From the NCBI GenBank assembly GCA_002269645.1, contig NIVC01001085.1, positions 1 to 30,240 of the forward strand: DNA of 30,240 bases. Reading direction: 5' to 3'. Under the pieces are notes generated by a model. That model had not been told where the DNA came from and did not search any database. It was given only the letters and a program-made list of their open reading frames with translations. A program made the translations under genes and the position numbers. The stretch comes from Macrostomum lignano. Lineage: Eukaryota. Shown piece after piece: positions 10,086 through 30,240 of this stretch; position 1 is the stretch's first letter; the number at the start of each line of letters is the position of its first letter.

Positions 10086-10144
<59 letters not shown>

Positions 10145-10229: not shown

Positions 10230-10262
<33 letters not shown>

Positions 10263-10347: not shown

Positions 10348-10410
<63 letters not shown>
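9413..10410. repeat. (CTGT)n microsatellite with GT, CTAT and CTTATGG interruptions
   Basis: Direct. Confidence 0.97.
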
Positions 10411-10572
10411 CAACAGAAATTTTTAATGGTCCTTGATCAGCAACCTTGCACGATGTTTTTGAACAATTTGATGACCCAAGCTTGGCGCCTCATTTTTGTA
10501 CTAATATTTATGTGTTTTGCTGTGTGCCCAACTTACCCGAATGAGTTAAATTATTAATTTAATATTGCGCAG

Positions 10573-10752: not shown

Positions 10753-10804
10753 GTTTGACACTGCCGTTATCTGTTGTGAGACTGGTCGGTGTTGTCGCTG
10801 AAAG

Positions 10805-11625: not shown

Positions 11626-11802
11626 GGAACTTTTACCTGTGTTAAAGATCGTGAAATTTATTTAAAGTTTTCCGCATGATTTAAATTAATAAGCCATGCT
11701 CAGCTGCAGATGCATGCAGTAAAGATTAATTTGTTGTTTGCTTTTTTCGCGTGAACGTGTCTTTTAGAAGTGCCATATTGGGATTGAGCGATTCGATAGA
11801 AA

Positions 11803-12430: not shown

Positions 12431-12451
12431 GACTCTCCTGTCAACCCACAG

Positions 12452-13063
12452 ACGGACACTGACAAGACGCCAAAGGTGCAGGAGCCGCAGCCCCAGCCGC
12501 AGCCCGAAGCCGTCAACCGTCTCCCAGTTCCCAGCATCGTGGCCGAACCCGAGCCAGCGAACGAGAAGACCGTCGATGCCGTCGGAGGCTCCTCGGATCG
12601 ACGCGTGTCGGCCATCATGGAGAAGGAGAAGGTGGAAGAGTCGGAGACGGAACGCCGTCGGATCTCGCGACGTAATCGGGCAACAAAACGAGCCACGCAG
12701 GGTGTCGCACAAGATGTTGTCGAGCAGGCGAAGAAACTTGTGGAAGAACGACAACAAGCGGCTGCTTCAGCGGCTAATGACACTTCGACAAATAGTTCAG
12801 ATGCCGCAGCCTCCTGTCACAGCAGCAATGACTCTGGAGTCAGCGTAACTGGAGCCTCCTCGAAGCAGCCGCTGCCCGCTGTACTGGAAGATTCCTCCAC
12901 CGCGGCTTCTGCTGTACCCGCCGCGTCGACAAACGCTAGTACGGATGATGATTCTGCTGGTAGAGGGAATGCTACTACTGGCAGTAGTGCTAGCAGTAGC
13001 CGGTATAGTCGTTTTAATCGGCGACAGGCTACTATGGGCTTGCCGCCAACTGCTGGGGATCAG
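12452..13063 (+). CDS. PPP1R12: MYPT/PPP1R12-like exon carrying the inhibitory phosphorylation site (human MYPT1 Thr696 equivalent)
   Basis: CCCACAG acceptor at 12451 and CAG|GTGAGC donor at 13064. 612 nt, phase 0-0. EESETERRRISRRNRATKRATQGVAQDVVEQAKK aligns by eye with MYPT1 EESESQRKARSRQARQSRRSTQGVTLTDLQEAEK. Confidence 0.92.
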
Positions 13064-13200
13064 GTGAGCTTTATTTGATGGCATCATATTTGCTAGCGTG
13101 TATGATGTTTGTTTTTTTGATTGAGCGCTGTTCTCATCAATCAGTGACATGCAGGTTTTGTAATGACTGATGGACACTGAACTGTAATTTTTCTGTCTTT

Positions 13201-13477
13201 CAGTCAGTCAGTCACCCACTCACTCAAGTCAATCAGTCAGTCAGTCAGTCAGTCAGTCAGTCAGTCAGTCAGTCACCCACTCACTCAAGTCAATCAGTCA
13301 GTCAGTCAGTCAGTCAGTCAGTCAGTCAGTCAGTCAGTCAGCCAGTCAGTCAGTCAGTCAGTCAGTCAGTCAGTCAGGCAGTCAGTCAGTCAGTCAGTCA
13401 GTCAGTCAGTCAGTCAGTCAGTCAGTCAGTCAGTCAGTCAGTCAGTCAGTCAGTCAGTCAGTCAGGCAGTCAGTCAG
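13201..13477. repeat. (CAGT)n microsatellite with a duplicated CACCCACTCACTCAAGTCAAT insert
   Basis: Direct. Confidence 0.97.
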
Positions 13478-13585
13478 AAACAAGCTGCATGTTCAACCAA
13501 AGCAGAAATACTAGGCAAGCATCTGCAGCTAATTAAAGCTCCGATGAGGTTTGCTGGTCTAACAGAATTCAATATAACTCTACAG

Positions 13586-13606
13586 GGTAACCTTCTGCCA
13601 GCGCAG
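13586..13606 (+). CDS. PPP1R12: Candidate 21-nt microexon (GNLLPAQ) of the MYPT gene
   Basis: CTCTACAG acceptor and consensus CAG|GTAAGA donor. 7 codons, phase 0-0, no stop. Confidence 0.55.
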
Positions 13607-14077
13607 GTAAGAAAAAAAGAGGGCAGCTTTCAGGATTCTTTCTAATCTTCGTCCTCCCAACCCCCCACCCCGTTTATTTCGGTCACTCCTAACTTTCTTC
13701 TCTTTCATTTCGATCAAGAGGAGCTCCTGAGGCTGCTGAAAAAGGCTGCCCTTATTTCGAACTTGCGTGTACATTACCGAACAGTGTTGTTCTCTGGCTT
13801 GAAAGTTGGGGCAGAGGGACAGACAGACTTGTAGGTAGGGGAAGGAAGCGAATTAGCGAACTGCAGGACTGTATGGGCGACGGACCAATCTGCTAAAACC
13901 GGATTCTGGCTCGGCTTCATTGGCTTTTTTTACAGCATTGGGGTTGACCATCCAGATGCTAGGGTTAGGGGTTTAGGGCTTGGGATAAAGGATAAATCTT
14001 CTGAACTTGACTGTCTTTGTTGGAATCCCCCCTGTTGCTTTGCTCGGTTGGTTTCGGTTCGTACAACACACAAACAG

Positions 14078-14473
14078 AGAGACCCTAAAAGAAGAAGACA
14101 ATCTATAGAAGGTTGGAAGCCACAGGAAATGCCTCTGTTTCGAGCCACTTCAACGCCTCGTTCTGTGCACTCCGGTTCGCCGCTGTCTTCTTCTGCCGGT
14201 GGCAGCAATGTCTGCTACGGTGGGCCTCTTGGCGCTCTGTTAAGCATTAGTAGCGGCGCCAGCGGCGCCTCTAGCGCTAGTGGCGCCAGCAGTTTCGGTG
14301 GCAGCGCCCCAGCCTCGCGCCGTGGCTCGTTTCGTCATTCGAGTTCGGCGGGTTCCGGGTTTAGTCAGCAACCGTCTGCTGCTTCTGCTGCTGCTGCTGC
14401 GTCTTATTTGACACCGCAGTCAACCAGAAAGCATTCGAGATATTTTGCAAAATCTTCTGAGTCTGTGGACTCT
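14078..14473 (+). CDS. PPP1R12: MYPT/PPP1R12-like Ser/Gly-rich exon (RDPKRRRQSIEGW...RRGS...SYLTP...SVDS)
   Basis: AAACAG acceptor at 14077 after a pyrimidine tract and TCT|GTGAGT donor at 14474. 396 nt, phase 0-0, open, with basophilic kinase motifs. Confidence 0.78.
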
Positions 14474-14574
14474 GTGAGTGCCCTGGCATGTTGAGCGGAC
14501 TTCCCCGAAAGTTCTCCACCTTGAGGAATTTCAAACGATTGTTTACTTACTAGCATAACTGTTTCAAATTTAAA

Positions 14575-15125
14575 CTGGGGTATTCAATTCCTCTGAAATC
14601 GCCGTCAAGGGGTATTCAATTCCTCTTAACCCACAATCAAGGGGTATTTGATTCCTCTGAACTCACCATCAAGGGGTATTTAATTCCTCTGAAATCACCA
14701 TCAAGGGGTATTTAATTCCTCTGAAATCACCATCAAGGGGTATTCAATTCCTCTGAACTCACCATCAAAGGGTATTCAATTTCTCTGAAATCACCATCAA
14801 GGGGTATTTAATTTCTCTGAAATCACCATCAAGGGGTATTTAATTCCTCTGAACTCATAATCAAGGGGTATTCAATTCCTCTGAAATCAACATCAAGGGG
14901 TATTTAATTCCTCTGAACTCATAATCAAGGGGTATTCAATTCCTCTGAAATCACCATCAAGGGGTATTCAATTCCTCTGAAATCACCATCAAGGAGTATT
15001 CAATTCCTCTGAACGCACCATCAAGGGGTATTCAATAGGAAATCACCATCAAGAAGTATTCAATTCCTCTGAAATCAACATCAAAGGGTATTCAATTCCT
15101 CTGAAATCAACATCAAGGGATATTT
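14575..15125. repeat. Satellite, 32-bp unit CACCATCAAGGGGTATT(C/T)AATTCCTCTGAA(A/C)T
   Basis: Direct tandem units. Confidence 0.95.
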
Positions 15126-15400
15126 AATTCCTATAAATCCAATCCATAGGGGATATTTAATTTATATAAATATTTCAATTCCTATAATAGCAGAATATAC
15201 CCTAAGTGTTTATGGCATTCGAAACGCCACTCGAAAAGCACTCTAATAAGCCACTTCAAACCACTTAAGTGCCCAAAAATCAGCCGGGTATGTAACTGTA
15301 CAAACAATCTAATTTTTTTTCAATCTCTTATCTTTGACATTCACTTTGGCAGTATCTATACATGAAGTAGATCATAGCAGCTAACTATTCACAGGAGGGC

Positions 15401-15762
15401 GGGGGGCCGTAGCCCAGCGGTAGCGCAGCTTCTCTGGTGTGCCAGCGACCCAGGCTCGATTCCAAGTGCAGTCACATTAATTTGGGGCTGAATTTGAATC
15501 TCGGCTTGGCTCTGCTCGTGCAATTAACGGCCTTGAGAGCCAACCCCCAAGGCGCAGTGAAGTGTACATGCCTAAAGATAAAATAAAGTTAGGGCCGCTG
15601 TACACTCCTGTGTGAGTGTGTGCCTGCGTACGTATCCGCGCGCTTATATGCCTGCTCAGGGGAGTCGGCGGAATGGGCAGTAATGCCTCTCGCCGGTTGT
15701 GTGCCTATGTCGCTTAAAGTGCGCCAGGGTGCACACAAAACCCCCCTGCCTCTAAAAAAAAA
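15401..15762 (+). mobile_element. tRNA-headed bipartite SINE insertion with a poly(A) tail and 14-bp TSD
   Basis: A-box-like TAGCCCAGCGG and B-box-like GGCTCGATTCC. Internal A-rich linker at about 15573-15588 and terminal A-run at 15754-15763. Exact flanking direct repeat ATTCACAGGAGGGC at 15387-15400 and 15763-15776. Confidence 0.85.
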
Positions 15763-15949
15763 ATTCACAGGAGGGCTGGGGCAATTCTGCGGTCCCATTC
15801 CGCTGACTCCTCAGCAGACTCCTCAGCATATACCTGACTTTCTAATCGTTAGGCCTGAATATACCTGAATCGCATGACAACCCTCGGGTGGATTTTTTGG
15901 GCACAAAAGACCCAATTCAATTTGGGACTCAGCTTCTCTGCTCTACCCC

Positions 15950-16205
15950 TAATAATAAATAATAATTGATTACACCCGCCCTAATGTCCAGATGTGCAAC
16001 CGACAGCTCAGCCGCATCTGAAGGTTCAGTCCAAGGACTGGGGGGTCGCCACACACACCCTCAATTACCCCAGCTAATGCTGGCACCCATTTTACAGCTG
16101 GGTGAACTGAAGCAAAGCACTGTTAAGGGCCTTGCTCAAGTACACAAATTGCTCCGAATCGGTCGAGAATCGAACCCCAGACACTCTAACCACCAGGCTA
16201 CGCTC
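15950..16205 (-). mobile_element. tRNA-derived CORE-SINE, copy 2, with a deletion of about 20 bp in the tRNA head and a (TTA)n tail
   Basis: Shares long near-identical blocks with 6503-6808, e.g. GTCCAAGGACTGGGGGTCGCCACAC...CAATTACCCCAGCTAATGCTGGCACCCATTT. Confidence 0.85.
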
Positions 16206-16307
16206 GTACAACCCCCTATCCAAGACCCAGCTGTATTCAACTTAAATAAAACGATTGCTAACTTTCTTCTAGTTAAATTTGAGTTCGAATCACCCTTGAC
16301 CTCCCAG

Positions 16308-16610
16308 TCCGACTCAGGCAGAGGCAGCTCGCAGGCCATCGCCGACCCAGGCCACTCCGGCCTGTCCCGCTCCCGGCCCGGGTCCTATCACGGCTCCGCC
16401 TACGGCGCAACCGCGTCTTCATCTTCAGCCTCCTCGCCGTCATCGTCTGATTTAGATTACAAGCGACTCTATGAGAAAGAGAAAGCCGCTAACGAACGGT
16501 TGAATGCTGAGAATGGCCGCCTGCGGGAGGAGAATGAGCAGCTGAAGCGGCAGTCGAGCGAGCAACGACAAGTGGATAGACGGCTGTCCGAGTATGAGGC
16601 TCAGAACAGG
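16308..16610 (+). CDS. PPP1R12: MYPT/PPP1R12-like exon, start of the C-terminal coiled coil (PRKG1-interacting domain)
   Basis: CTCCCAG acceptor at 16307 and AGG|GTGAGT donor at 16611. 303 nt, phase 0-0. [18 protein letters not shown] matches MYPT1 DFKKLYEQILAENEKL. Confidence 0.92.
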
Positions 16611-16625
16611 GTGAGTGCCAGCTAG

Positions 16626-16654
16626 CTGTCTGTCTGTCTGTCTGTCTGTCTGCC

Positions 16655-16687
<33 letters not shown>

Positions 16688-16725
16688 GCCTGTCTGTCTG
16701 TCTGTGTGCGTTCCGCGTTTATGTC

Positions 16726-16781
<56 letters not shown>

Positions 16782-16820
16782 GTCTGCCTGCTTGCCTGTC
16801 TGTCTGTCTGTCTGTCTGTA

Positions 16821-16891
<71 letters not shown>

Positions 16892-16907
16892 GTGCGTTCC
16901 GCGTTTA

Positions 16908-16962
<55 letters not shown>

Positions 16963-17050
16963 GTGCGTTCCGCGTTTATGTCTGTCTGTCTGTCTGTCTG
17001 TCTGTCTGCCTGCTTGCCTGTCTGTCTGTCTGTCTGTCTGCCTGCTTGCC

Positions 17051-17139
<89 letters not shown>

Positions 17140-17154
17140 TAGTGTCTTAGTGCC

Positions 17155-17211
<57 letters not shown>

Positions 17212-17218
17212 GCTTGCC

Positions 17219-17287
<69 letters not shown>

Positions 17288-17300
17288 GGCTGTCTGTCTA
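16626..17300. repeat. (CTGT)n microsatellite with repeated GTGCGTTCCGCGTTTAT and CTGCTTGC inserts
   Basis: Direct. It starts about 15 nt after the 16611 donor. Confidence 0.97.
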
Positions 17301-17529
17301 TGCTTTGATGCTGATCTGTCCGATTTGGCAGTATAATATATGTCCGTTACCATTATGCTATTTGTTGATATACTTGTCTAACTGTTCCTAACACACGTAG
17401 CTATTGTCACTAATTTTAAAACGTACAAACGTCACATGGTTACATTTACGTGTACATTGTTATTAAAAGTTGAAGCCAGGCCACTCACGCCCGAACCCCA
17501 CTGCCTTAACGCACCGCCCCGATCCGCAG

Positions 17530-17619
17530 TCGCTGGAGCAGGTCATGAGAGAGAACGAGAAACTTAAAGCTGAGAACCGAGCCTTAGCTCGAGTGGTGGC
17601 TCGGCTATCGCGGCAATAA
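17530..17619 (+). CDS. PPP1R12: MYPT terminal exon A, leucine zipper SLEQVMRENEKLKAENRALARVVARLSRQ*
   Basis: CCGCAG acceptor at 17529, phase 0. Its heptads match the MYPT1 tail [24 protein letters not shown]. The stop codon TAA lies inside AATAAA (17615-17620). Confidence 0.9.
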   Translation, partial: SLEQVMRENEKLKAENRALARVVARLSRQ

Positions 17620-18672
17620 AATCGATAATTAAGGATGCACAAGGACTCTTTCTTCTGTTTCCCGCTTTCAACTCTTTGTATTCACAGTTTCGTCTGAGTC
17701 TTTGTGCTCCAGTTCGTTTATTCTTTTTTAGTGTCTGCTTTTTTGACCAACTCAAATCTATCAGCAATCGGTGGCCAGAAGTTTTATCAATTAATTTTCA
17801 TCGATAATTCTTCATTATTCTCGCTCTGGTACAATCTTCAATTCATAGTTCTTTCTCTTGATTGAATCAAACTAATTAAAATAGTTATAAGAAAAGAAAA
17901 TTTCGCTTATTCGGCAATCGAAAACGGAGCAATTCAAGTCGGCTCGACTAGGCTACTCGTTTAAGTAGTAAGCAGCGTTTTCGCATGCAAGTATGTTTTG
18001 TTAGTTGGAAATGGAATGCAATTTTGCAGTATTGCTTCATACTGATAATTAGTAGTTTTGTTAGTGATTTGTGGTGACATTTATGCAAATATAATAAATT
18101 ATATATTCAAAATTTTATCGTATACAACATGATTTTCAGTTTTATAGTTGACCCTTCATTATCAACCAATAATTGGCATTGCATGAATAAATCATAATGA
18201 TAGAAAATAATTATAATTTTCCATCATTTCTTCATCATTATCTAAATATACTAATATTTGAATATTTTATACATTATATAAACTATAGATTTAGTTTAAA
18301 TATAAAACAATTGTATTTAAATATTATTATATATATTATATTAAATTAGTGATTCTTAATCTTTGAAGTTTATTGTTATTGGAGTGTAATCTAATTAGAA
18401 TTTTCGCGAATAATTTTTTTCAATAATTTTTGTACTATTAATTTTATCTACAAACTATTAAATCGTTAAATTATTCAAATAGTTGAATAACTTGATTTAA
18501 TATTTTATTTATCGGAACTTGAAAATAAAAAAAATATAAGTAAATCTAAAAATCCAAAGCTTGCATTTTTTGCTTATCAAGTTGCTACCTATCCACGGTT
18601 TAATGATTTAATAAGCATTTATAAATTTCAGTTTGTTATCTACATACAGATATTTAATATCACATATTTTAG

Positions 18673-18816
18673 TTGGCAACCGCAGCATCAGCCGAGGTGG
18701 AAAACTCTCGTCTCCGCCTTGAGAACAGCAAGCTTCGAGCGGACAATGTGTCCCTAATTCGAGTTATCGATCGTCTGAAACGAACAAATAACAACGGCAT
18801 TGTTCGGCCGGTGTGA
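18673..18816 (+). CDS. PPP1R12: MYPT alternative terminal exon B, second leucine zipper LATAASAEVENSRLRLENSKLRADNVSLIRVIDRLKRTNNNGIVRPV*
   Basis: ATATTTTAG acceptor at 18672, phase 0. A GC-richer coding island in very AT-rich DNA. It has four heptad leucines with N-N-N-I at the intervening positions, and LIRVI is identical to the MYPT1 tail. Confidence 0.75.
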   Translation: MATAASAEVENSRLRLENSKLRADNVSLIRVIDRLKRTNNNGIVRPV

Positions 18817-19813
18817 TTTGATTGGATATCAGACAAACAAATTATATTTAAACCCAACGGTTCTGCTTAAACATTTTCGTTTATAACTAACTTAACTTGC
18901 TTTTTTCCTGCAATGTATAAAGCCTGTTTTATTTTTTTTAGCTCGTATTATCATTAATAACGCTATTATTAGAAACACGTACGCGTATTATTGTTCGTGG
19001 CGGTCAAGTATAGCTTACGTATTTACGTATTTAGCGCGAGCAAAGTTAGCCAATATGTTGAGTGTTAGAACTTGCTATGAACTATCAAATTGTTAGTATT
19101 TATTGCATATTAAGTAAGCTCATATCTGCGCTAAAAATAGTCAAACAATATTAATGTAACTCTTTAAATCTATTCGTCAAAGTTTGTGTAGATTTTTCAA
19201 CTAACACTAACCATTTCGCCTTAACCTTATAGTATTATTTTCTTGTTTTACAGGGACTTATGCCTTTTTCGAAGTGCATCGTGTCCTTTATTTGTAATTT
19301 ATTTTGAATCTCTAATTCTGATTGCATGCACTCGGTTGAAGCGAATAAGTTGGGAAGCAGTAGAAATTGTGGTGGTGTTGTGAAACCGTTTTTCACCTTC
19401 ATATTTTGCTTGTACGGTTACAAACTAACTAAAGATCATATAAGATTAATATTTATTATAAAATCCAAGAAAAATTCAATTTTTTGTTATAATTTTTGTA
19501 AGAGTAATCTTCGTTGACTTACCGTTTTTTCAATGACCCGGGCACGCACTGGTCACTGTTTTTGTTGATTTTAAAACAACTCCGCTCTCCGCTTGTTTGG
19601 CTTCTTTAATTTTATAATGCTCCTCCACCCTGGAACTCTGCTTCAAACCTCCTTGTGCAGTTTCTTTTGTTTTAATCCACTCCCTAGTTAAATTAACAGA
19701 AAGTGTAAACTCAGCATAAAAAATATATTTTTGTTTCCTTTGATACAGTCGTATTTTAATTTACAACTAAAGCCCGCTAACCCTTGTTATTGCAATGCCT
19801 TAATTGCTATTTT

Positions 19814-19920
19814 AATAAATCTATTAATATTAATATTTGTTTTATGTCAACGGCATTCATACCGTTATTTTTTACGGGTTTAATTTGAATGGAAAAAATG
19901 TGCGCTGGTAATTGTAATAA
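19814..19920 (+). promoter_or_regulatory. Candidate distal polyadenylation signals (AATAAA at 19814 and 19915) for exon B transcripts
   Basis: Hexamer match only. The region is AT-rich, so a chance occurrence is likely. Confidence 0.25.
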
Positions 19921-22695
19921 AAAAATTTATCTTGTAACTTAATAACATAGGTCTATGCAATTAAAAGCTTTTTTTCACCGCTTCACCCGCAGAGCTGCTG
20001 ATTTGGCAATTTCGTCGCATTCAAAAGCTTATAGAGACTATATAGTTTGTAAAAAAATGTTTTTCATTTCTATAAAATTTCTTTAAATATTAAATATTTT
20101 TATATCCATTTTTCTTTCCAGTTAAGCTGGCATTTCTGAGCCTTTCACAACAGCTGCAGATCGAACTGTGGATATTGTAGATAGTCTATTATAGGCACTT
20201 AGGATCTGCATATCGATTTAGCCTAGACCATGCTTAATAGTTACCTATTGAATATTATAGGAGGTATATTTACACTTAGTAAAGTACGATCCTTCTTGTA
20301 CGGACTAGCGAAACAATTTCAAAACTTTCGAGAGCAGAAGAGAGCTGCCTGCACCTCATGCACCATCTGTCCTGTATGGCAGCTTACTCGTACTTGACGT
20401 TTATTGTGTTGTGAATCGGGACGATCTCAACCATCACCTGAAGTAACGCCTCACGACTGCATGCCCCGTGCTCACGAAACGAATGCAACTCAGATAAGCC
20501 CACAGCGACTCCGCGGATCCTTGCGCGGATTTGGGAATCAGACCTTCGAGGTAAATGTAGACGAACTGTAGATTGGGAAAATTGTGTCGCCCGTGTACAT
20601 CATTGCCCATGGGCATTAAATCGCAGCCTCCGTGGAGTCTGGCATACCGCGGGGCTTATAGCTTCAGGCTAACAACTCGCTGCAGCAACCAGCTTGTCCA
20701 GACGAGACCCTCCGCAACGGTCTTCGTTGGTTGGAAGAGCATTCCATTCCATAGCACCCCGTTAAGTACCATGCAGGACTAACAGGAACACAACACAAAT
20801 GATGTCTCGAAGAAGTCCGATAGGCCGTCAAGTGTTGAAATAACCGCCATAATTTTTGTCATGGTGCATCGCCGTCGGCGGTGAAATCCAACCTCTGGCA
20901 CATTGTACACATGGAGCACCATTAAAGCCTAAATGGCATTCAAATTAAGGCATACCAGAGGTCACGCCTTTACTGATAGCGCAGTTTTACCTTGGGTTCA
21001 ATGAATGTCAAGGGCCAAGAATTCCTATATTTCCTACATTATTTTGTTGCAAATCGGTGTTGTTAGCACGATTATTCTAGCGCCACGGTACGCAGTTCAG
21101 CTCCAAAGAGATTACCTCCAGAGAGGTATCCATTGCCAGCGCTGCAACTACTAGCTGTGTTGAGAATGCAGCTAACACTTGTGCGTGACTGACTGCACCT
21201 CAACTTTACTCGGAAGACTCTGCACTTACCTGGGCCCGAGAATCTCTGCCAGCTTCTCCGCTACCAAAGGGCTACGAGGGCGAGCGACCAATCTTGGCTC
21301 TACATGTATGTCTGAACTTCCTGGGACTTTCAGGTGGAAACTGTATCTAATAACGCTAGCTCGTCATTAATCAAGACCCCGATGCGCGCTGAACATAAAA
21401 TTAAGGCAATAAATGCACTACACGTAGTATCTGTCTAACACGTTTACTTCCGTGTGTTATAAAGATGTTTCCGTACATATGTAGACTGGACCAGGTACAG
21501 AATTTGGTACACTACGCTGTTCACACCACAGAAAATAGAATAGAATTCTAGGCATTGTTTTCTTGAGCATTTCCTGTTCACTGATCGCTGTCACTATTTT
21601 CAGCGAGAAACAAAAAGTCTATGTATATACTATGTTAGATTGAAAGACTTGCCACTTAAAACTAGAATTTTAGAGTACACAACAAAATAATTGCCGCAGG
21701 GTCTAACTGATTTCCAGCTGAGCTAAAATAGGAGTAATTGTGTCATGCTTAATTGAAGCGAATTCGCGGCTTCTGAAGTCTTCCTTGCTGGCAGTCAAAG
21801 CTAAGATATTAGGAGATATAAAATTCAAAAAGATTTCGACGCATTGATCGATCTCAGCTTAGGAAAGTTTCAAAGCCATTCAATTGCTGCCACTAAACTG
21901 AAAATCGCTTCGACAATCGCCCCCAGAAATCTTTAACTTCTACTAACTCATTTAGCCGCGTCCCTTCCAGATGCCACACGGGCCCTCTTTTCAGCTGTAA
22001 GTCATTTCAAGAATTTAAAAAGATTGCTATTGTCCATAAAATATCCAGAAAAATAGCTGAAAACTTATGCATATGTGGGCGTTCTTCTGCAGTTGCTCAT
22101 GTCAGTAAGAAGAGTGGAGAGTGGCAGAGATTCGCCACTCTTTGGCATGAAGCTTGGCATGGAAGTTTGGACTCGACACACAGACACAGTGACTACAGAG
22201 AATTGCACTCCGTTGCTTCTATACAAAACCTCTCGATCTTCCCAACGAATCAAAATCAATATCTGCGAATAAAGAATTGAGGGACAAGATTGAGAACCAA
22301 CTTTTACAGCTCAGTTGTCCGATAGCTAGTCTGATCTGACTGTTAACCGCTCCGCTTGTGAGAAATAAAATTTTACAGAAAATTTTCTCAACTCAAGAAC
22401 ATCTTTCAGTTTTCTGCTTCGACAGTATTTTTTTCGATTTTGGAATAAGCGTCACCTGGAAAGCAGAACAGCCGATATCCAGCTGGAGCTCCCACAGTCA
22501 GGGAGTTGCCAATGAAAAAGCTGTTTGCTCAACAAAACTGCGGGGGCGAGAGGGCGCCTCTTGTATTTATGAAGGCGAGAATCCGCCAACCGATCTCCAA
22601 CGGTTGAGCTGAGCTGATACGAAATTCGTAGACAAAACCCTTTTAGATCGAATCGAGCGGTAAAAAGGCTGGAAAAGGGATTCTAACGGTTCACC

Positions 22696-22777
22696 ATGAT
22701 CAGCAGGCCGACTTTTCAAGTGGCTTGCCATCAATGGCTTCTGTTTTTGATGCTATTCCAGGCTGTAACTGCCTACA
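22696..22777 (+). CDS. F-type lectin gene exon 1, signal peptide MISRPTFQVACHQWLLFLMLFQAVTAY
   Basis: CACCATG start, hydrophobic core and a V-T-A cleavage-type motif. Consensus A|GTAAGT donor in phase 1, which matches the downstream exons. Confidence 0.82.
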
Positions 22778-22968
22778 GTAAGTTTATCTCCTAAATTTTG
22801 ATTCGTTTATTTCTTTATAACATACAGAGAAACACTGTCAAAAAAGCGAGTCCGAAAGCATGAGCTGTAGCATGAGTCATGAATTACTGACTTCACATTC
22901 AACGTATGCCTACGAATGAACGGTTTTATACATTCAAATATAACTAACATGTCTGAAAATATTTTCAG

Positions 22969-23370
22969 GCATGCTGAAGCTTAGCCATTGCTCTCAGAGC
23001 TCCGTTGGCTGGAAAGGCGTTTGCGGCAGAGCCATCGACGGAAACACCAACCGGAACTACTGGGGACACTCGTGTACTCACACGAAGCTTGAACACGGCT
23101 GGTGGGTGGCCAAGACTCAGAAGCTGGCTCACATCAGACAGATTAAAATCTATAACAGAGCTGACTGTTGCGCCAACCGACTCACAAACTTTGTGGTGAT
23201 GGTGGATGGCCATCAGTGTGCTTCATACCATTCTCGCAGCGCCTTCAGTGTGAAGACATTCCACTGCAACCGCGTCGGTCGCTCCGTGATGATCCGAAGT
23301 CGAGCGAGAACCTATTTAACTCTCTGCGAAGTTCAGGTCTTCGGCGCGTACACAACACGCAGAAGCGGAC
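22969..23370 (+). CDS. F-type lectin (fucolectin/FTP, F5/8 type C fold) domain exon A1
   Basis: CTAAC branch point, TTTTCAG acceptor and C|GTAGGT donor. 402 nt, phase 1-1. Motifs AIDGN, SCTHT, WW, NRADCCANRL and LTLCEVQV. Confidence 0.92.
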
Positions 23371-23568
23371 GTAGGTTGCGCAAATCAAGTGACCTATTTC
23401 AAATTTGGGCTTTGAGAATTTCTTGTAACTTAATTTATACTGTGAGCGAATGACTGCGACCAGAAAGACCCACAAAGAGTACAAGAAACATGTAAAAATA
23501 CATGTAAAAGAGTACAAGTACATGTAAAAATTGGGTAACTAAGTTAAAATATCAAAACCAATTCCCAG

Positions 23569-23973
23569 GAAAACTAAGCTTCAACAAGTGCTTCCAGACC
23601 TCGACGGGCTGGAACGGAGTCTGCAAGCGAGCCATGGACGGAAACAAAAGCCAGAGCTACTGGAAGCACTCTTGCAGCCACACTAAATCCCCTAGCGGAT
23701 TCTGGCAAGGAAGCTTTACCAGACCCGCTCGCATCAAGGAGGTCGTTATCTACAACAGGCTCGACTGTTGCTCCAACCGACTCAACAACTTCGACATCAT
23801 CGTGGACGGACAGGTGTGCGCCAGACACAGGTCCAGCACGTTCTTCTCAGTGAAGAGATTCAAGTGCGACAAGGTCGGTCAGAATGTCATCATCAGGACC
23901 AATCTGAAGAAGTGGCTCACTCTGTGCGAGGTCGAAGTGTTCGGAGAGTACATCAAGCAAAAGAAGAGAGCCG
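23569..23973 (+). CDS. F-type lectin domain exon B1
   Basis: TTCCCAG acceptor and G|GTCAGT donor. 405 nt, phase 1-1. Motifs AMDGN, SCSHT, NRLDCCSNRL and LTLCEVEV. Confidence 0.9.
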
Positions 23974-24080
23974 GTCAGTCTCGAAGACGCTCATTTCTTT
24001 CTTTTAGTACATGTACTCAATTTGCTGCTTGTCAGTCATCAGACATTTAGTCTTAAATATCTAACATGCAACGGTTGCAG

Positions 24081-24482
24081 ATATGCTGCCTCTGAGCCAT
24101 TGCTCTCAGAGCTCTGTCGGCTGGAGCGGCGTCTGCAGCAGAGCCATCGACGGAAACACCAACCAGTACTACTGGGGATACTCGTGCACTCACACGAAGC
24201 TGCAGAAGGGCTGGTGGATGGCCAAGACTCAGAAGCTGGCTCACATCAAGGAGATCAAGATCTTCAACAGACTCGACTGCTGTTCTAATCGACTCACAAA
24301 CTTTGTTGTCACGGTGGACGGTCACGCGTGCGTCTCGTACAACTCTCGCAGCGTCTTCAGGGTGAAGACGTTCAGGTGCAACAGAGTAGGCAGGATCGTG
24401 AAGATCAGCAGTCGCAAGAGGACCTACCTGACCCTATGCGAAGTTCAGGTGTTCGGCTCGTACACGAAGCGATCCACAGGCA
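24081..24482 (+). CDS. F-type lectin domain exon A2
   Basis: CTAAC branch point at 24061, TTGCAG acceptor and A|GTAAGT donor. 402 nt, phase 1-1. Read-through of the donor gives a stop at 24488-24490. Confidence 0.92.
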
Positions 24483-24661
24483 GTAAGTAGAGAAGTCTTT
24501 TTTGTTTTACGACAGCATGGCCAGGCTTAATTGTCCCGTATAAAAGCTATTACTCGTATAACAACTGCAACGCGGGTGTAATGCTGTTTATATTGGACGT
24601 TTTACAATTGCCAGCATACATGTACTTCTGATTCTTTGTGACGATTTTTTGCTTTTCTCCT

Positions 24662-24898
24662 AAACGCGCTTCCTGGTACAGCTGGGGCCCGGACTAATTG
24701 GGCCTCACGGTCTCCAGCGCCACCTGGCAGAACCGATTGGATAGGGGCCGGGTCAAGCAAACGTGCAGACTTGCGAAGACGTGCAGGAGGCGACTTCTTG
24801 AGGGCGATGGCCCAGAGACGCGTTTTCTGACTGCTCCCCCTTTCTGGCTACTGCGTGGCCGGCGGAGCAGTACCTTGTTGTTTTTGTTTTTGTTGTTG
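24662..24898 (+). mobile_element. Retroposed insert of about 240 bp with a (TTG)n tail, in a lectin intron
   Basis: A GC-rich body ending in TTG/TTTTG repeats, flanked by TTTTCTCCT at 24653-24661 and 24899-24907. It is absent from the paralogous intron after exon A3. Family not identified. Confidence 0.55.
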
Positions 24899-25048
24899 TT
24901 TTCTCCTTATTTTATTCGACTGCTTTTTAGGCATTGTTTCGAGCATGAAAATGAATGCAATGCCCTAAGACTCCTGCGTTGCTTATCAATAGCAAATACT
25001 CGTCATTGCTCATACTCGCTCGATATCTCTCTCTTTCCCCCCTTCCCT

Positions 25049-25049
<1 letters not shown>

Positions 25050-25086
<37 letters not shown>
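25050..25086. repeat. (CT)n microsatellite
   Basis: Direct. Confidence 0.95.
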
Positions 25087-25090
<4 letters not shown>

Positions 25091-25559
25091 CCCATGCAAT
25101 ATTTCAACGCCCGCTGACGTATGTGATCTGCTCGACATCAATGGGCGTCGTTGGCAAATGACTATTTTATATCACGCTGACCAATAACGACGTCATATCA
25201 TCTATCATCGAACGTCGGTCTAGTGTAACAGTACTGACACAGAGTAGAGAATCAGATCTGATACCAGCTATTATACGAGTATTGCTGTCTCTTAGCCCTC
25301 CAAGCGTCCAGTCAAAAACTTACTTATAAAGTTAGTGCCAAAAAGACTCAACCTTTTAAACGAATCGTAACCATAAGTCAAAAACTAAAACACCACACCT
25401 ACCACTATGAAGACGTACCACAAATACGTAAATTTTAGCACGAGTACCTAAAACGAAAATTTTCGTAAGATTTTGACGCCCCGAAGTAAGTTTCTTGCTG
25501 CTAAAGGTTTTCACTTAAATACAGCACGTAAGAACTAACCAACTGAACTGAATCCACAG

Positions 25560-25964
25560 ACAAGCTGAGCTTCAACAAGTGCTTCCAGACCTCGACGGGC
25601 TGGAACGGAGTCTGCAAGCGAGCCATGGACGGTAACAAAAGCCAGAGCTACTGGAAGCACTCTTGCAGCCACACTAAATCCCCTAGCGGATTCTGGCAAG
25701 GAAGCTTTACCAGACCCGCTCGCATCAAGGAGGTCGTCATCTACAACAGACTCGATTGTTGCTCCAACCGACTCAACAACTTCGACATCATCGTGGACGG
25801 ACAGGTGTGCGCCAGACACAGGTCCAGCACGTTCTTCTCAGTGAAGAGATTCAAGTGCGACAAGGTCGGTCAGAATGTCATCATCAGGACCAATCTGAAG
25901 AAGTGGCTCACTCTGTGCGAGGTCGAAGTGTTCGGAGAGTACATCAAGCAAAAGAAGAGAGCCG
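25560..25964 (+). CDS. F-type lectin domain exon B2 (near-identical to B1)
   Basis: CTAAC branch point, TCCACAG acceptor and G|GTCAGT donor. 405 nt, phase 1-1, offset 1991 bp from B1. Confidence 0.9.
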
Positions 25965-26071
25965 GTCAGTCTCGAAGACGCTCATTTCTTTCTTTTAGTA
26001 CATGTACTCAATTTGCCGCTTGTCAGTCATCAGACATTTAGTCCTACATATCTAACATGCAACGGTTGCAG

Positions 26072-26499
26072 ATATGCTGCCTCTGAGCCATTGCTCTCAG
26101 AGCTCTGTCGGCTGGAGCGGCGTCTGCAGCAGAGCCATCGACGGAAACACCAACCAGTACTACTGGGGATACTCGTGCACTCACACGAAGCTGCAGAAGG
26201 GCTGGTGGATGGCCAAGACTCAGAAGCTGGCTCACATCAAGGAGATCAAGATCTTCAACAGACTCGACTGCTGTTCTAATCGACTCACAAACTTTGTGGT
26301 CACGGTGGACGGTCACGCGTGCGCCTCTTATAACTCTCGCAGCGTCTTCAAGGTGAAGACGTTCAGATGCAACAGAGTAGGCAGGATCGTGAAGATCTTC
26401 AGTCGCAAGAGGACCTACCTGACCCTATGCGAAGTTCAGGTGTTCGGCACGTACACAAAGCGATCCACAGGCAGTAAGTCCAAAGTTGTTAATATTTGA
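26072..26499 (+). CDS. F-type lectin domain exon A3, probably terminal (stop at 26497-26499; a GTAAGT donor also exists at 26474)
   Basis: TTGCAG acceptor, phase 1, same motifs as A2, offset 1991 bp from A2. No further lectin exon was found downstream. Confidence 0.88.
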
Positions 26500-26612
26500 C
26501 AGTTCAGAATTGCCAGCATACTTCTGGTTCCTTGTTGCGAAAGTTTTTTTTCTTCTTTATATGTTCAAGAGTATTTTGGAATATCATTGACCAGGAAAAT
26601 GAAAGCAACGCT

Positions 26613-28460
26613 TTAACGTGCAGCGTGGTCTTCGTTGGAAAAGACGGAGACTCGTTTGGTAGCCTGGAGAAACCGAATGAGTCGTGTGATATTCTCGGTC
26701 CGGCAAGCGTCGTCCCTGGACGGGTTGAGCCCGAGGTAATTATAGTTTATCTGGTCTCGATTTAAATCTGGCCAGTAGCAGACGAAGTGTTTGGCGTCTT
26801 CGTTTTCGAGGTTGCAAAAGTTGCCAATTTTCGACGGTCGGATTTTACTGGTGAAGCAAAGCTCGACCAGTGTGACAAGCTCTTCTTAAATCATTTCGCC
26901 GTTGCCCGGTAGGCAAACCGAGGCGATGAGTGTAGTCCTCCCAGGAAGTATGTCTTCAGATTGGATGACACATATGTCCCTGGTGGACAGTTCCGATCTG
27001 AGCCATGCGTTATTGAGCTTGACAATATGATACAGGATCTTGGTGCCATATTTACCTCCCGGGTGCAGGATGATCCGTGGTGCATTTAAGTCAATGTGCT
27101 TCATAAGATTGACTGAAGCAGCAAACCTGTGCTGCAGGTTGACCTGCAAGCAGTGAATTCCCTGAAAGACAGTCATGTCTACTCTCAAGGGAAGGCAAAA
27201 AACGGCTCGTCCTCAGTTTCATCCGTAAGAGTTGAGTCGCCAATTTCCATTGGCTAAGGCTCAGCCGCCTCCCCAGCCGCGGAGGTGGACGCGGCGCCCG
27301 CGGCAGGTGAGACACCTGGCCGCACTGCACCGCCTTTTTCCTCAGCACCCCGCCGTCAGGAGTCTGGCTCGGCCGACAGCATCCTCCACCTGTGGCGATT
27401 CCACCTGTTGGATGGCGGAGCCGGGCCGCAGTCCAGTTCCTTTGGCTGGCTTTGAGCAGTTTAACAAGGGGCACGAGTCCACTAGAGGTGAAGTCTCAGA
27501 GACTGAGCTTCGTTAAAGGCGTGCTGAATTAGTCCTGACCGCCGACTACCGCGGACGGGTCTACGTCCGCACGAGGCAGAATCAGCAGCACGAAGTGCCT
27601 TGTTAGGCTCGGGATCAGGTTGCTGTTGCCGCTTGGCCGGCGGAGCCGGAGCCCAGCTCCGGGTGCGGCGCGCTTCCCGTCGTTCTTGACCTCCGTCTTG
27701 CCCTCCTCACAACGGACGATGGTCTGTTAATGGAGACCAAGGTGGAGGGTCGAGCCATATGGTAGCCGCTTGGTCCATCCCTTCGTCACGCCGAGGACGA
27801 CAAAGGTCCCGGTCGTGCCCTTGTGGACCGTGTTGTGGTACACAAGACCACTGGCGTCGAGATCCGGCTGCCGCTTGATCCAAATCCGATGGCGGATGGT
27901 CTTTTCGGACGCTCGCTCTCCAGGGTGAAGGTCAGCTGACCAGGTCGCTGTGCCAGTCGAACTTGGGCAGCTGATCTCGCAGGAGTTGGGTGCTCTCCTC
28001 GGATTTGCACCACAGTAGGATGTATCCGTTCGTCTTTGTGGACTTGATGATGTCAACGAAGACCCCCTTCTGGGTTAGGTTTAGCAGGCCCTCGTCGATG
28101 GTACGCCACGCGACGTCGAGCTGCTCAGGCGTCAAATCGCAGTCCCCGCCGAGGATCCTCAGGGCAGGTTAGAGCGGCTGCTTGACCTTTGAGGCGTAGG
28201 TCTCCGAGGTCGTGTCCGGACCGCTTCATTGTTGTAAGGCGGAAGGCTAGCAGGGTTGCCCCCCCCTGAGAGTTCGAGGACACGGCGGTTTCTGATGGTC
28301 CAGCCGCGCCACCAGACTCCCCGGGGTACTTCTCCGCCGCGGTGACTCCCAAAGGCCTCACCGCGGCTTGTCCGCCCTCCGAAGGTTTTTATAGGGTAAG
28401 GTCTAGGTCTAGGGTTTCTAGGGTAAGGTTTTTAGAAGCGTTATTCAGGTACTAGAATAA
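26613..28460 (-). mobile_element. Degenerate, internally deleted R1/LOA-clade non-LTR retrotransposon (ORF1, partial APE endonuclease, ORF2 C-terminal zinc knuckle; no RT)
   Basis: Broken ORF1 frames (TYASKVK; LRILGGDCDLTPEQLDVAW...GYILLWCKSEESTQLL) resemble DUF4780-type R1 ORF1. The ORF2 start IHCLQVNLQHRFAASVNL, then PRSCII and LIASVCLP..EELVTLVELC, are typical of R1 APE. The tail is a CX2CX8HX4C-like GNFCNLENEDAKHFVCYWP followed by YLG..ITRLIRFLQAT. Several stops and frameshifts. The 3' boundary is uncertain (26544-26640). Confidence 0.75.
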
Positions 28461-29013
28461 GTTCTTTAATCAAGCTTAAAAATGTGAATGATTAACAAGA
28501 CACGCGGCTTTAATGTGCGATTTTGGAAACGTCAAATTTTGACCCCGGATATAGCCAGCCGGATAGCTTAAAATTGAACCAAGATTGGATAGTGTTAAGT
28601 ACATCTACGATGGTATGGCAACTACAACTATCGTGTACTATAGAGAAATTACTATAGAGAAATAGCTAGAGAAATCAACACCAACGCCTTCACGCATACG
28701 CATTTTGCGCAAAATAACACATTTTCCCCTTACGTTTCAGTATCATTGTGCGCTTAGTGCCAGTTTTTACGTTAGCGGTTCAGATGTCACTCGCATTTCT
28801 TCTATATTTGCTTGTTGGATGACAGGCTTTTCTGTCTCAGTAACACGGAAAGGCAATCTTTCAAGGCTATTTCTGTCTTCCAGGAGGCCAGATGTATTCA
28901 ATATTTCGCCTTCATCACTGCCACAAAGACACTTCTGATAACAGAAAGTTCATAAAGTGTAGCTCCCTAAATTATATCAAATTATAACTTATGCTTATCC
29001 TCCATATGGAATA

Positions 29014-30240
29014 TGGAGGATGTTCCATAAGTACTTATACTTTTGCATGCTGCTCAGGAACTACGCAACCAATCATTGTAAGTTTTATGTCGCTGGAAAG
29101 CGGCTTTACTCATCTTTAATCTGTCGCCAAAATCATTTCGTTCTGTCAACTATGTCAAAAGTTACAACAAAAAACGTAGTCAAAGGTCACCCATAGACTT
29201 ACAAGAAATTTTCAAAATCAAAACTTCAAAGTTCAGCACGCAGAGTTATTTCGGATTCTACATAATGCATTCTTTTTTTGCTTCATAAGCGAATGCCACA
29301 CCCTTTTCGTCTATGGAAAATACTGGCCTAAGCTTTCACAGCATCTTAATCTTAAGATCACAGCATCTTAATCTTGTAAAGTTTCACCACCTTGGCTGCT
29401 GCTGCATCACCATGGATGTGAACTCAAGGGAAGGACAGCGCGCTGCAATTTTTACCCTCTGGAAACTCGGAAAAAAGCTATCAGAGATTTATGCGGATTT
29501 ATGCAACATTCATGGAGCTAATGCGGTGAGCAGGATGACCGTCTACAACTGGGTTGAGCAGTTCGAAGCAGGAAGGACCAATGTTGCTGATTTGCCGAGG
29601 TCGGGCCGCCCCTGCACATCAGGCTCTGATGCTCTCACCGATCGAATTCTTGATCTGCTGGACGAAGATTGTCGGCTAACGATTCGACAGATTGCAGATA
29701 GACTGGACACGCCGAGCACAACTGTGCATCGCTGCTTGTCGCGCATGGACTTTGTCAAGCTGACTGCTCGTTGGGTGCCACGCCTACTCACCTCGGACTT
29801 GAGACTGCAGAGGCAGCAGATTTGTCAGGCCAATATTCGGATGATGGAAGAATACGGTGGTTGGGATCTCTTCCATCGAATGATAGTCACTGGAGATGAA
29901 ACCTGGATTCCCCATTTTGATCCACCAACGAAACGTGATTCCCAGGTCTGGATGCTGAAGGGCTCTGATCCTCCGGTAAAAGCTCAAAGGGACGCACATG
30001 GAAAGAAGATCATGCTGTCTCTGTTTTTCGACTGCAATGGTCCTCTAACTGTCGAGTTTTTGGAGCCAAACACTACAATAAACTCTGAGCGCTACGTTGA
30101 AACGCTAACAAAGCTGCATCATGACATCCAGAACAAGCGTCGTGAAAATCCCAGACCTTTCATTCTTCATCATGACAATGCAAGGCCTCATACAGCACAA
30201 AAGACAGTCGAGGCAATCAGCAAGCTGAAGCTCCATCTTT
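29014..30240 (+). mobile_element. Mariner DNA transposon, left part (continues beyond the window)
   Basis: TA at 29012-29013 is followed by the TIR-like TGGAGGATGTTCCATAAGTACTTATAC, then about 400 bp of leader and the transposase ORF. Confidence 0.85.
29412..30240 (+). CDS. Mariner transposase, uninterrupted to the window edge (276 codons seen)
   Basis: Manual translation MDVNSREGQRAAIF...W..QFEAGR..V.DLPRSGRP...WVPRLLT...IVTGDETW...LHHDNARPHTA shows the HTH regions, the WVP motif and the first two catalytic Asp. No stop or frameshift. It is absent from the ORF track, presumably because it has no stop in the window. Confidence 0.96.
   Translation, partial: MDVNSREGQRAAIFTLWKLGKKLSEIYADLCNIHGANAVSRMTVYNWVEQFEAGRTNVADLPRSGRPCTSGSDALTDRILDLLDEDCRLTIRQIADRLDTPSTTVHRCLSRMDFVKLTARWVPRLLTSDLRLQRQQICQANIRMMEEYGGWDLFHRMIVTGDETWIPHFDPPTKRDSQVWMLKGSDPPVKAQRDAHGKKIMLSLFFDCNGPLTVEFLEPNTTINSERYVETLTKLHHDIQNKRRENPRPFILHHDNARPHTAQKTVEAISKLKLHL

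What the first reader, a model, noticed from the sequence alone, without database searches (positions are those of the whole stretch)
22696..26499. Secreted five-domain F-type lectin with a dibasic site in every linker: a candidate lectin polyprotein
Seen: signal peptide plus domains A1-B1-A2-B2-A3, about 700 aa. The linkers read TTRRSGRKL, KQKKRAD, YTKRSTG and KQKKRAD, and A3 is also followed by KR. All five domains keep the His and R-x-D-x4-R residues. Established: that motif is the F-type fucose-binding signature, tandem-domain F-lectins are known, and KR/RR/RxxR sites are proprotein-convertase targets. Inference: the precursor may be cut, prohormone-style, into five separate lectins of two specificity classes, rather than acting as one multivalent chain. 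This is the strongest candidate for an undescribed system in the window.
Basis: partly seen in the sequence, partly recalled or inferred. Interest (0 to 1): 0.8.

Follow-up and report, generated by a model that had tools for sequence, protein, structure and literature searches.

The report
Flatworm tandem fucose-lectin gene, basic linkers
This is the first third of a large secreted lectin gene of the flatworm Macrostomum lignano, with up to 15 fucose-lectin domains and a WSC domain; its linkers are unusually rich in paired basic residues, but nothing yet shows that the protein is cut there.

Summary
The sequence features are real. The window holds a signal-peptide exon and five F-type lectin domain (FTLD) exons with canonical splice sites, all introns in phase 1. 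Every domain keeps the His/R-x-D-x4-R motif, and the linkers read as quoted.

The "five-domain, ~700 aa" protein is an artefact of the window edge. The stop at 26499 is a read-through into an intron whose donor is intact. The window is Macrostomum lignano DNA, 98% identical to GenBank contig NIVC01000031.1. There, the RNA-seq-guided model PAA93238.1 splices A3 onward to more FTLD exons and a terminal WSC domain followed by AATAAA. Window and contig exons together give one open 2149-aa frame with 15 FTLDs plus WSC.

The dibasic linkers are more than chance: 15 of 15 linkers here against 18 of 185 in other taxa. However:
- no linker fits the furin consensus;
- the FTLD-to-WSC linker has Pro at P1';
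- the domain cores hold 32 further dibasic pairs;
- more distant M. lignano paralogues mostly lack dibasic linkers;
- the whole protein is very basic (pI about 10).

Best reading: a multivalent secreted FTLD-WSC lectin from a lineage-specific expansion, built by recent exon-pair duplication. The polyprotein idea is unexcluded but weakly supported (about 0.12).

The parts
22696..22777 (+). Exon 1: start codon and signal peptide (MISRPTFQVACHQWLLFLMLFQAVTA|Y). It is 82 nt and is followed by a phase-1 intron.
   Evidence: The donor is gtaagt. No FTLD exon lies upstream in the window.
22969..23370 (+). Exon 2: F-type lectin domain A1 with its C-terminal linker AYTTRRSG (23346-23369).
23569..23973 (+). 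Exon 3: F-type lectin domain B1 with linker EYIKQKKRA (23946-23972).
24081..24482 (+). Exon 4: F-type lectin domain A2 with linker SYTKRSTG (24458-24481). Reading through the donor would give GSK*.
24483..25559 (+). Intron 4 (1077 nt). It is not homologous to the other introns and contains a (CT)17 microsatellite at 25052-25085.
25560..25964 (+). Exon 5: F-type lectin domain B2, with a protein sequence identical to B1. The GenBank model PAA93238.1 starts at the internal Met at 25625.
26072..26473 (+). Exon 6: F-type lectin domain A3 with linker TYTKRSTG (26449-26472). Its donor CA|GTAAGT is intact.
26474..30240 (+). Start of a transposon-laden intron of about 5 kb, not 3' UTR. It includes the spurious read-through stop at 26497-26499 and a mariner-type transposase ORF at 29412-30239. 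The next exon pair (B3-A4) lies about 1.2 kb beyond the window end.
23567..24488 (+). Duplication unit 1 (B1 exon, 107-nt intron, A2 exon). It is about 98% identical to unit 2 at 25558-26479, and the homology stops at the outer exon edges.
25558..26479 (+). Duplication unit 2 (B2 exon, 107-nt intron, A3 exon).

Best explanation
The region is the 5' end of one large Macrostomum lignano gene: the signal peptide and the first five of up to fifteen one-exon F-type lectin domains. In the GenBank assembly the gene is BOX15_Mlig033443g2 / PAA93238.1.

The gene continues across a transposon-filled intron to more FTLD exons of classes B, A, C, B' and A', and ends in a WSC carbohydrate-binding domain. 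The array grew by recent tandem duplication or gene conversion of two-exon (B-A) and three-exon (C-B'-A') units. All exons are phase 1-1.

The product is most likely a secreted, very basic (pI about 10), multivalent fucose-type lectin that works as an intact chain, cross-linking or coating glycans. Exon skipping possibly yields isoforms with different repeat numbers. The short 6-8-residue linkers are K/R-rich as part of this basic character.

Shown: gene structure, family membership, motif retention, extension beyond the window, linker enrichment. Inferred: secretion, fucose binding, action as an intact chain.
For: - The splice model is consistent throughout.
- Family membership: Pfam FTLD x5 and the solved structures FBP32, AAA and SpX-1.
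- Organism and locus: the best hits are all M. lignano FTLD or FTLD+WSC proteins. Window 16626-30239 is 98.2% identical to NIVC01000031.1.
- Onward splicing: P0123 (PAA93238.1) contains the A3-specific residues (KIFSRKR, GTYTKRSTG) spliced directly to NKLSFNKC...SQDYKK, which is B3 or B4. It then runs through A5, C, B' and A' to WSC.
- That annotation derives from a genome-guided RNA-seq assembly (PMC5730564).
- The contig's A2 exon carries frameshifts. The ORF reopens before B2, which explains why the model starts at the Met inside B2.
- Window exons plus downstream contig exons form one open 6450-nt CDS of 2149 aa.
- WSC is confirmed at 8e-20.
- AATAAA lies 49 nt after the WSC stop, and none follows A2 or A3.
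- The tandem FTLD proteins characterised so far are described as intact multivalent chains, e.g. the FBP32 trimer and oyster bindins with 1-5 FTLDs (PMC5712786).
- Each domain has 8 Cys, the same in every domain type, an even number compatible with intradomain pairing only.
Against: - No direct transcript was seen that joins exons 1-4 to the rest.
- The GenBank model uses only 7 of the 11 FTLD exons from B2 onward. The true isoforms are therefore unknown, and short-read assembly across 98%-identical exons is unreliable.
- An older UniProt model (A0A1I8JGN9, P0002) ends with the read-through SKSKVVNI.
- The conserved [KR]R in every linker, retained in diverged variants (TTRRSGRK, TKRSTGNK, IKQKKRAD, TKLAAKRSD), is somewhat more than composition alone predicts. 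It is compatible with cleavage.
- Expression site, ligand and protein size are unknown.
Confidence: 0.65

Rival explanations
1. Lectin polyprotein. The multi-FTLD precursor is cleaved at the [KR]R in each linker by a kexin- or PC2-like convertase in the secretory pathway. This would release single FTLDs of several specificity classes, which could then oligomerise as single-domain eel agglutinin does.
For: - 15 of 15 linkers carry [KR]R, against about 10% of inter-FTLD linkers in other taxa. No other protein with at least two linkers in the 129-protein sample has a dibasic pair in all of them.
- The motif persists in sequence-diverged linker variants and in the 82%-identical paralogue P0001.
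- The dibasic residues sit in predicted coil with lowered pLDDT between well-modelled domains.
- Each domain has 8 Cys, an even number compatible with intradomain pairing only, so cleaved domains could separate.
- A signal peptide is present.
Against: - No linker has the furin consensus R-X-K/R-R. Only RRSGR|K is a minimal RXXR, and it has Lys at P1'.
- The FTLD-to-WSC linker is KRR|P or KKR|P. Pro at P1' is disfavoured for convertases (my own knowledge), yet the basic cluster is conserved there too.
- 32 dibasic pairs occur inside the domains.
- More distant paralogues mostly lack dibasic linkers.
- Given the linkers' 33% K+R, a dibasic pair is expected in 20-98% of shuffles.
- The linkers are only 6-8 coil residues long.
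- Neither F-lectin review mentions proteolytic processing, and a literature search found no animal lectin polyprotein.
Confidence: 0.12
2. A bindin-like variable-repeat lectin. Every FTLD exon is phase 1-1, so exon skipping, together with unequal crossing-over between the 98%-identical units, generates isoforms or alleles with different numbers and orders of A, B and C domains. These may include short forms ending after A2 (GSK*) or A3 (SKSKVVNI*). This reading is not exclusive of the best explanation.
For: - All domain exons are symmetric, at 402-411 nt.
- The GenBank model skips one B-A pair and one C-B'-A' triplet.
- The UniProt model P0002 is A1-B-A3.
- In-frame stops lie just after both the A2 and A3 donors.
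- Oyster bindin makes proteins with 1-5 FTLDs by alternative splicing, with microsatellites and a retroposon at the repeats (PMC5712786). A (CT)17 run and transposons lie in the introns here.
Against: - The skipped exons are near-identical copies, so the skipping may be a short-read assembly artefact.
- No poly(A) signal follows A2 or A3.
- No isoform data could be found.
Confidence: 0.3
3. The basic linkers are functional polyanion-binding elements, in the manner of Cardin-Weintraub BBXB clusters. They would anchor the lectin to sulfated or acidic mucus or matrix, rather than serve as cleavage sites. This reading is not exclusive of the best explanation.
For: - Linker K+R is 33%, against 17% overall.
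- The protein's pI is about 10, with only 5-6% D+E.
- The basic cluster is conserved even where Pro follows it (KRRPK, KKRPK).
- Other M. lignano paralogues have arginine-rich linkers without a clean dibasic motif, such as GRSRSRTPG and ARRRPRVSR.
Against: This rests on motif resemblance only. No binding data exist, and many paralogues have neutral linkers.
Confidence: 0.2

Closest known systems
Tandem-domain F-type lectins, e.g. striped bass MsaFBP32 (PDB 3cqo) and the Xenopus protein with five FTLDs and a pentraxin domain
   Same: The FTLD fold and sequence family match (3cqo E=5e-23 across two consecutive domains). The His/Arg/Arg fucose triad motif is kept. Short linkers of about 10 residues join head-to-tail domains of related but different sequence. 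The protein is secreted.
   Different: There are up to 15 FTLDs rather than 2-5, and a C-terminal WSC domain. WSC is not among the co-occurring domains listed in the review. Each domain has 8 Cys. The protein is very basic, and its linkers are K/R-rich (33% against 7% K+R).
Pacific oyster sperm bindin (1-5 tandem FTLDs from one gene)
   Same: The repeated FTLD exons allow variable repeat number. Recent intragenic duplication is evident. Microsatellites and transposons lie in the introns next to the repeat exons (PMC5712786).
   Different: Oyster FTLDs are split by an intron in mid-domain, whereas here each FTLD is one exon. There is no evidence here for sperm expression, alternative splicing or positive selection. 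A WSC tail is present here.
Convertase-processed repeat polyproteins: nematode polyprotein allergens such as ABA-1, pacifastin-type inhibitor precursors, and LEKTI (my own knowledge, not tested here)
   Same: The precursor is secreted, has many tandem small disulfide-bonded domains, and has basic residues in every linker.
   Different: Those precursors carry regular consensus sites (RxKR/RRKR or clean KR/RR), and mature single units have been demonstrated. Here the sites are heterogeneous, none is a furin consensus, one has Pro at P1', and no mature products are known.
Other M. lignano FTLD(-WSC) paralogues (P0003, P0005-P0008, P0011; UniProt 'WSC domain-containing protein')
   Same: They share the domain family, signal peptides, the FTLD-WSC architecture, and 43-57% identity.
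   Different: They have 2-4 FTLDs, and their linkers mostly lack dibasic pairs.

Membership tests
F-type lectin (FTLD) family | Sequence or profile similarity to the FTLD / F5_F8_type_C_2 domain and to solved F-lectins | tested here: met
   PF22633 at 2.6e-44 with five stretches. FBP32 3cqo 5e-23, Sm-hPAF 3le0 1e-16, SpX-1 2j1r 1e-13, AAA 1k12 2e-11.
F-type lectin (FTLD) family | Fucose-binding motif His-x(~24)-Arg-x-Asp-x4-Arg/Lys | tested here: met
   The motif is present in all five window domains and in all ten downstream ones. The spacing is 25-26 residues from the SC[TS]H histidine. It aligns with SCTHT...NRGDCCPERL of FBP32.
F-type lectin (FTLD) family | Actual fucose or glycan binding | not testable with these tools
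   This needs recombinant protein and a glycan array.
FTLD-WSC secreted lectins of M. lignano | C-terminal WSC domain on the same transcript | tested here: inconclusive
   No WSC exon lies in the window. In the matching GenBank contig, a WSC exon (8e-20) ends the RNA-seq-based model that includes window exons B2 and A3. The link to exons 1-4 is inferred.
Proprotein-convertase-processed polyprotein | Entry into the secretory pathway (signal peptide) | tested here: met
   The N-terminus has a basic n-region, an 11-residue hydrophobic core and VTA|Y, judged by inspection. No predictor was available.
Proprotein-convertase-processed polyprotein | A consensus convertase site (furin R-X-K/R-R, or a clean KR/RR with a permissive P1') at every unit junction | tested here: not met
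   No linker has R-X-K/R-R. KR|S, KR|A and RR|S are minimal dibasic sites only. The last junction is KRR|P or KKR|P.
Proprotein-convertase-processed polyprotein | Sites conserved in orthologues or paralogues beyond what composition predicts | tested here: inconclusive
   The sites are kept in the 82% paralogue P0001 and in diverged linker variants. They are mostly absent from the 43-57% paralogues. Shuffling gives P([KR]R) of 0.10-0.70 per linker. No orthologues from other Macrostomum species were in the databases searched.
Proprotein-convertase-processed polyprotein | Mature single-unit products observed | not testable with these tools
   No proteomic or expression record for Mlig033443 was found.
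Bindin-like variable-repeat F-lectin | Alternative splicing or recombination changing FTLD number | tested here: inconclusive
   The symmetric phase-1 exons permit it. Database models differ in which exons they use, but this may be an assembly artefact.

The most novel reading that the evidence does not exclude
A giant precursor of about 240 kDa, with 15 FTLDs and a WSC domain, is cut at the conserved [KR]R of each 6-8-residue linker by a kexin- or PC2-type convertase. This would release a stoichiometric cocktail of single F-type lectin domains of four or five specificity classes (A, B, C, B', A'). It would be the first animal lectin polyprotein.
Probability: 0.12. Interest if true: 0.65.

Novelty: new member of a known kind. 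Interest (0 to 1): 0.3.

Why it matters
As it stands this is an uncharacterised but already annotated member of the tandem F-type lectin family. It belongs to a lineage-specific FTLD(-WSC) expansion in a model flatworm.

- **Annotation.** The GenBank model is 5'-truncated by an assembly frameshift, and the window supplies the missing signal peptide and three domains.
- **Architecture.** Up to 15 FTLDs plus WSC is unusually large, and WSC is not a partner listed in the F-lectin review read here.
- **If the linkers were cleavage sites.** That would be a new way for an animal to produce a mixture of lectin specificities from one gene. M. lignano has transgenesis (PMC5730564), so a reporter or tagged-protein test is feasible.

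Tried and rejected
- **WSC or extra FTLD exons in the window.** tblastn found none, even at E=50. The gene simply leaves the window.
- **Exact look-up of P0002.** It is not on record in the assemblies.
- **Gene ID in papers and supplements.** Mlig033443 / PAA93238 gave no hit in full text or in the supplements of four M. lignano expression papers, so no tissue or expression data were obtained.
- **Literature on lectin polyproteins or furin.** The search gave only an irrelevant virology review. The oyster bindin primary paper is not held.
- **Structure prediction of the spliced window protein.** P0123 was used instead. Its N-terminal domains and WSC were poorly modelled, so only residues 380-920 are interpretable.
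- **Closest non-Macrostomum relative, P0010.** It comes from an unidentified JGI metatranscriptome contig and cannot serve as an orthologue.
- **Rfam and tRNA scans of the window.** Nothing was found.
- **Antisense ORFs inside the exons and ORF 24698-25117 in intron 4.** I treated these as chance and did not test them. The minus-strand ORFs at 26886-28056 had no Pfam match.
- **"Two specificity classes".** This is true for the window only. Downstream there are further classes: C is 66-69% identical to A, and B' is 71% identical to B.
Full report
**1. Is the observation in the sequence?**

Yes. An ATG at 22696 opens an 82-nt exon encoding MISRPTFQVACHQWLLFLMLFQAVTAY. By inspection this has a basic n-region, a hydrophobic core and a VTA|Y cleavage site. 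Five exons of 402 or 405 nt follow: 22969-23370, 23569-23973, 24081-24482, 25560-25964 and 26072-26473. Each is bounded by AG and GT, and every intron is in phase 1.

The spliced product carries five matches to the F-type lectin profile PF22633 (2.6e-44) and to PF00754. It also matches solved F-lectins: striped bass FBP32 (3cqo, 5e-23, aligned across two consecutive domains), the Streptococcus FTLDs and eel agglutinin 1k12. All domains keep the SC[TS]H histidine and N-R-x-D-C-C-x-N-R, and each has 8 Cys.

**2. Where is it from, and is it complete?**

The best database hits are all from the free-living flatworm Macrostomum lignano. Window 16626-30239 is 98.2% identical over 13.7 kb to GenBank contig NIVC01000031.1, held here as L001.

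In that contig the annotated protein PAA93238.1 (BOX15_Mlig033443g2; P0123; 1020 aa) begins at the Met inside exon B2, which is window 25625. It contains the A3-specific residues (KIFSRKR, GTYTKRSTG). It then continues, spliced in frame, into NKLSFNKC...SQDYKK (a B exon beyond the window), an A, a C, a B' and an A' domain, and finally a WSC domain (WSC 8e-20).

That annotation derives from a genome-guided RNA-seq assembly with experimentally defined transcript ends (PMC5730564), so the onward splice from A3 has transcript support. Further points agree:
- The A3 donor (CA|GTAAGT) is identical to the donor used after A2.
- No AATAAA or ATTAAA lies within about 420 nt after A2 or A3, whereas AATAAA sits 49 nt after the WSC stop.

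The contig's A2 exon carries frameshifts that the window lacks. The frame reopens before B2, which explains why the GenBank ORF starts at the first Met in B2.

Joining the six window exons to the ten downstream FTLD exons and the WSC exon of L001 gives one uninterrupted 6450-nt CDS. It encodes 2149 aa with 15 FTLDs plus WSC, about 242 kDa once the 27-residue signal-peptide exon product is removed, with pI 9.9. The window ends about 1.2 kb before the next exon pair. The "five-domain, ~700 aa, six-exon" unit is therefore an artefact of the window edge.

What remains inferred is that exons 1-4 and the annotated part lie on the same mRNA, and which of the near-identical exons are actually used. 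The GenBank model uses 7 of the 11 FTLD exons from B2 onward.

**3. Are the dibasic linkers more than chance?**

As a description, yes.
- In the conceptual full protein all 15 linkers contain [KR]R.
- Dibasic density is 0.16 per adjacent pair in linkers against 0.017 in domain cores.
- Linker K+R is 33% against 17% overall.
- In 185 inter-FTLD linkers from tandem FTLD proteins of other taxa, only 18 have a dibasic pair, and linker K+R is 7%. No other protein with two or more linkers has one in all of them.

As evidence for a specific motif, it is weaker.
- The 15 linkers fall into three positional classes: A-to-B/C, B-to-A, and A-to-WSC. They are related by recent duplication.
- Given their own composition, a dibasic pair is expected in 20-98% of shuffles, and [KR]R in 10-70%.
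- The domain cores carry 32 further dibasic pairs, such as CKRAM, VKRFK, SRKRT and LKKW.
- The close paralogue P0001 (82%) keeps the pairs. The more distant M. lignano paralogues P0003 and P0005-P0008 mostly do not.

**4. Do the linkers look like convertase sites?**

Only minimally. None has the furin consensus R-X-K/R-R. The candidates are TTRR|S, RSGR|K, KKR|A, TKR|S and AKR|S. The FTLD-to-WSC junction is KRR|P in this gene and KKR|P in the paralogue. There, a conserved basic cluster is followed by Pro at P1', which is unfavourable for convertases (my own knowledge). This suggests that basic clusters are kept in these linkers for reasons other than cleavage.

An AlphaFold model of P0123 is confident for residues 380-920, with pLDDT above 90 in the domain cores. 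It puts TKRSTG, TTRRSG, TKLAAKRS and IKQKKRA in 6-8-residue coils between the last strand of one domain and the first strand of the next. Confidence dips there to block means of 63-88, and residues 786-789 fall below 50. The sites are thus plausibly exposed but short. This is compatible with cleavage and does not argue for it.

**5. How the array arose.**

B1-intron-A2 (23567-24488) and B2-intron-A3 (25558-26479) are about 98% identical, including the 107-nt intron. The homology stops abruptly at the outer exon edges. The same unit recurs twice more downstream, and a C-B'-A' unit occurs twice. This indicates recent tandem duplication or gene conversion of exon blocks.

Each exon encodes a domain together with its own C-terminal basic linker, so the linkers are copied along with the domains.

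**6. Literature.**

Two reviews of F-type lectins (PMC5712786, PMC12221842) do not contain the words cleavage, proteolysis, furin or polyprotein. They describe tandem FTLD proteins as intact multivalent chains (the FBP32 trimer). They describe oyster bindin as varying from 1 to 5 FTLDs by alternative splicing, with microsatellites and a retroposon at the repeats. The 2017 review (PMC5712786) notes the FTLD motif in planaria but does not list WSC as a partner domain. No paper or supplement mentioning this gene was found.

**7. Mechanism and verdict.**

The most likely reading (0.65) is a secreted, strongly basic, multivalent fucose-type lectin with a WSC tail, acting as an intact chain, possibly in several repeat-number isoforms.

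The polyprotein reading is not excluded, and I put it at about 0.12. The linker enrichment is genuine and unusual for the family. The site quality, the Pro-flanked junction, the in-domain dibasic pairs, the paralogue comparison and the overall basic composition all weaken it.

Two non-exclusive alternatives are bindin-like isoform variation (0.3) and polyanion-binding linkers (0.2).

**8. Novelty.**

This is a new, functionally uncharacterised member of a known family that is already annotated as a hypothetical protein. It has an unusually long FTLD array and an FTLD-WSC architecture. The practical gain is a corrected gene model. The polyprotein idea is a cheap, testable hypothesis, not a finding.

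Noticed in passing
window 1-17300: More than half of the window is a patchwork of about a dozen tandem-repeat arrays with periods of 4, 5, 16, 21, 22, 24, 32 and 34 nt. Examples are a 16-mer x119 at 2011-3901, (CTCTC)n at 4460-5662, a 24-mer x56 at 7622-8976 and (TGTC)n at 9400-10410. These arrays explain the extreme GC/AT skews and the many overlapping spurious ORFs.
   Followed up: partly
window 29412-30239 (runs off the right end): An intact-looking mariner/Mos1-type transposase ORF lies inside the long intron after exon A3. It matches HTH_48 and Transposase_1 (2.7e-16) and DDE_3.
   Followed up: partly
window 26600-28250, minus strand: A GC-rich stretch (0.586 G+C for 27001-28000) carries several minus-strand ORFs of 100-127 aa without Pfam matches. 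It is probably a degraded transposable element in the same intron.
   Followed up: partly
window 25052-25085 (intron 4): A (CT)17 microsatellite lies about 470 nt upstream of exon B2, with a T/G-rich tract near 24880-24910. This recalls the GA/CT microsatellites that flank the FTLD exons of oyster bindin.
   Followed up: no
L001 8454-8855 (GenBank NIVC01000031.1) vs window 24081-24482: Exon A2 is frameshifted in the GenBank assembly but intact in the window. This probably explains why PAA93238.1 starts at an internal Met and lacks the signal peptide and A1-B1-A2.
   Followed up: yes
L001 31630-32518: Another B-A exon pair lies about 6 kb downstream of the WSC stop. The B copy is out of frame in my scan. 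It could be a pseudogene fragment or the start of a neighbouring paralogue.
   Followed up: no
window 23567/24488 and 25558/26479: The homology between the two B-A units ends within a few bases of the outer splice sites, while the inner 107-nt intron is as conserved as the exons. This pattern suggests gene conversion confined to the unit.
   Followed up: partly
window 18001-20000: An AT-rich island (G+C 0.27-0.32) lies upstream of the gene. It has no ORFs of note and no RNA family or tRNA hits.
   Followed up: no
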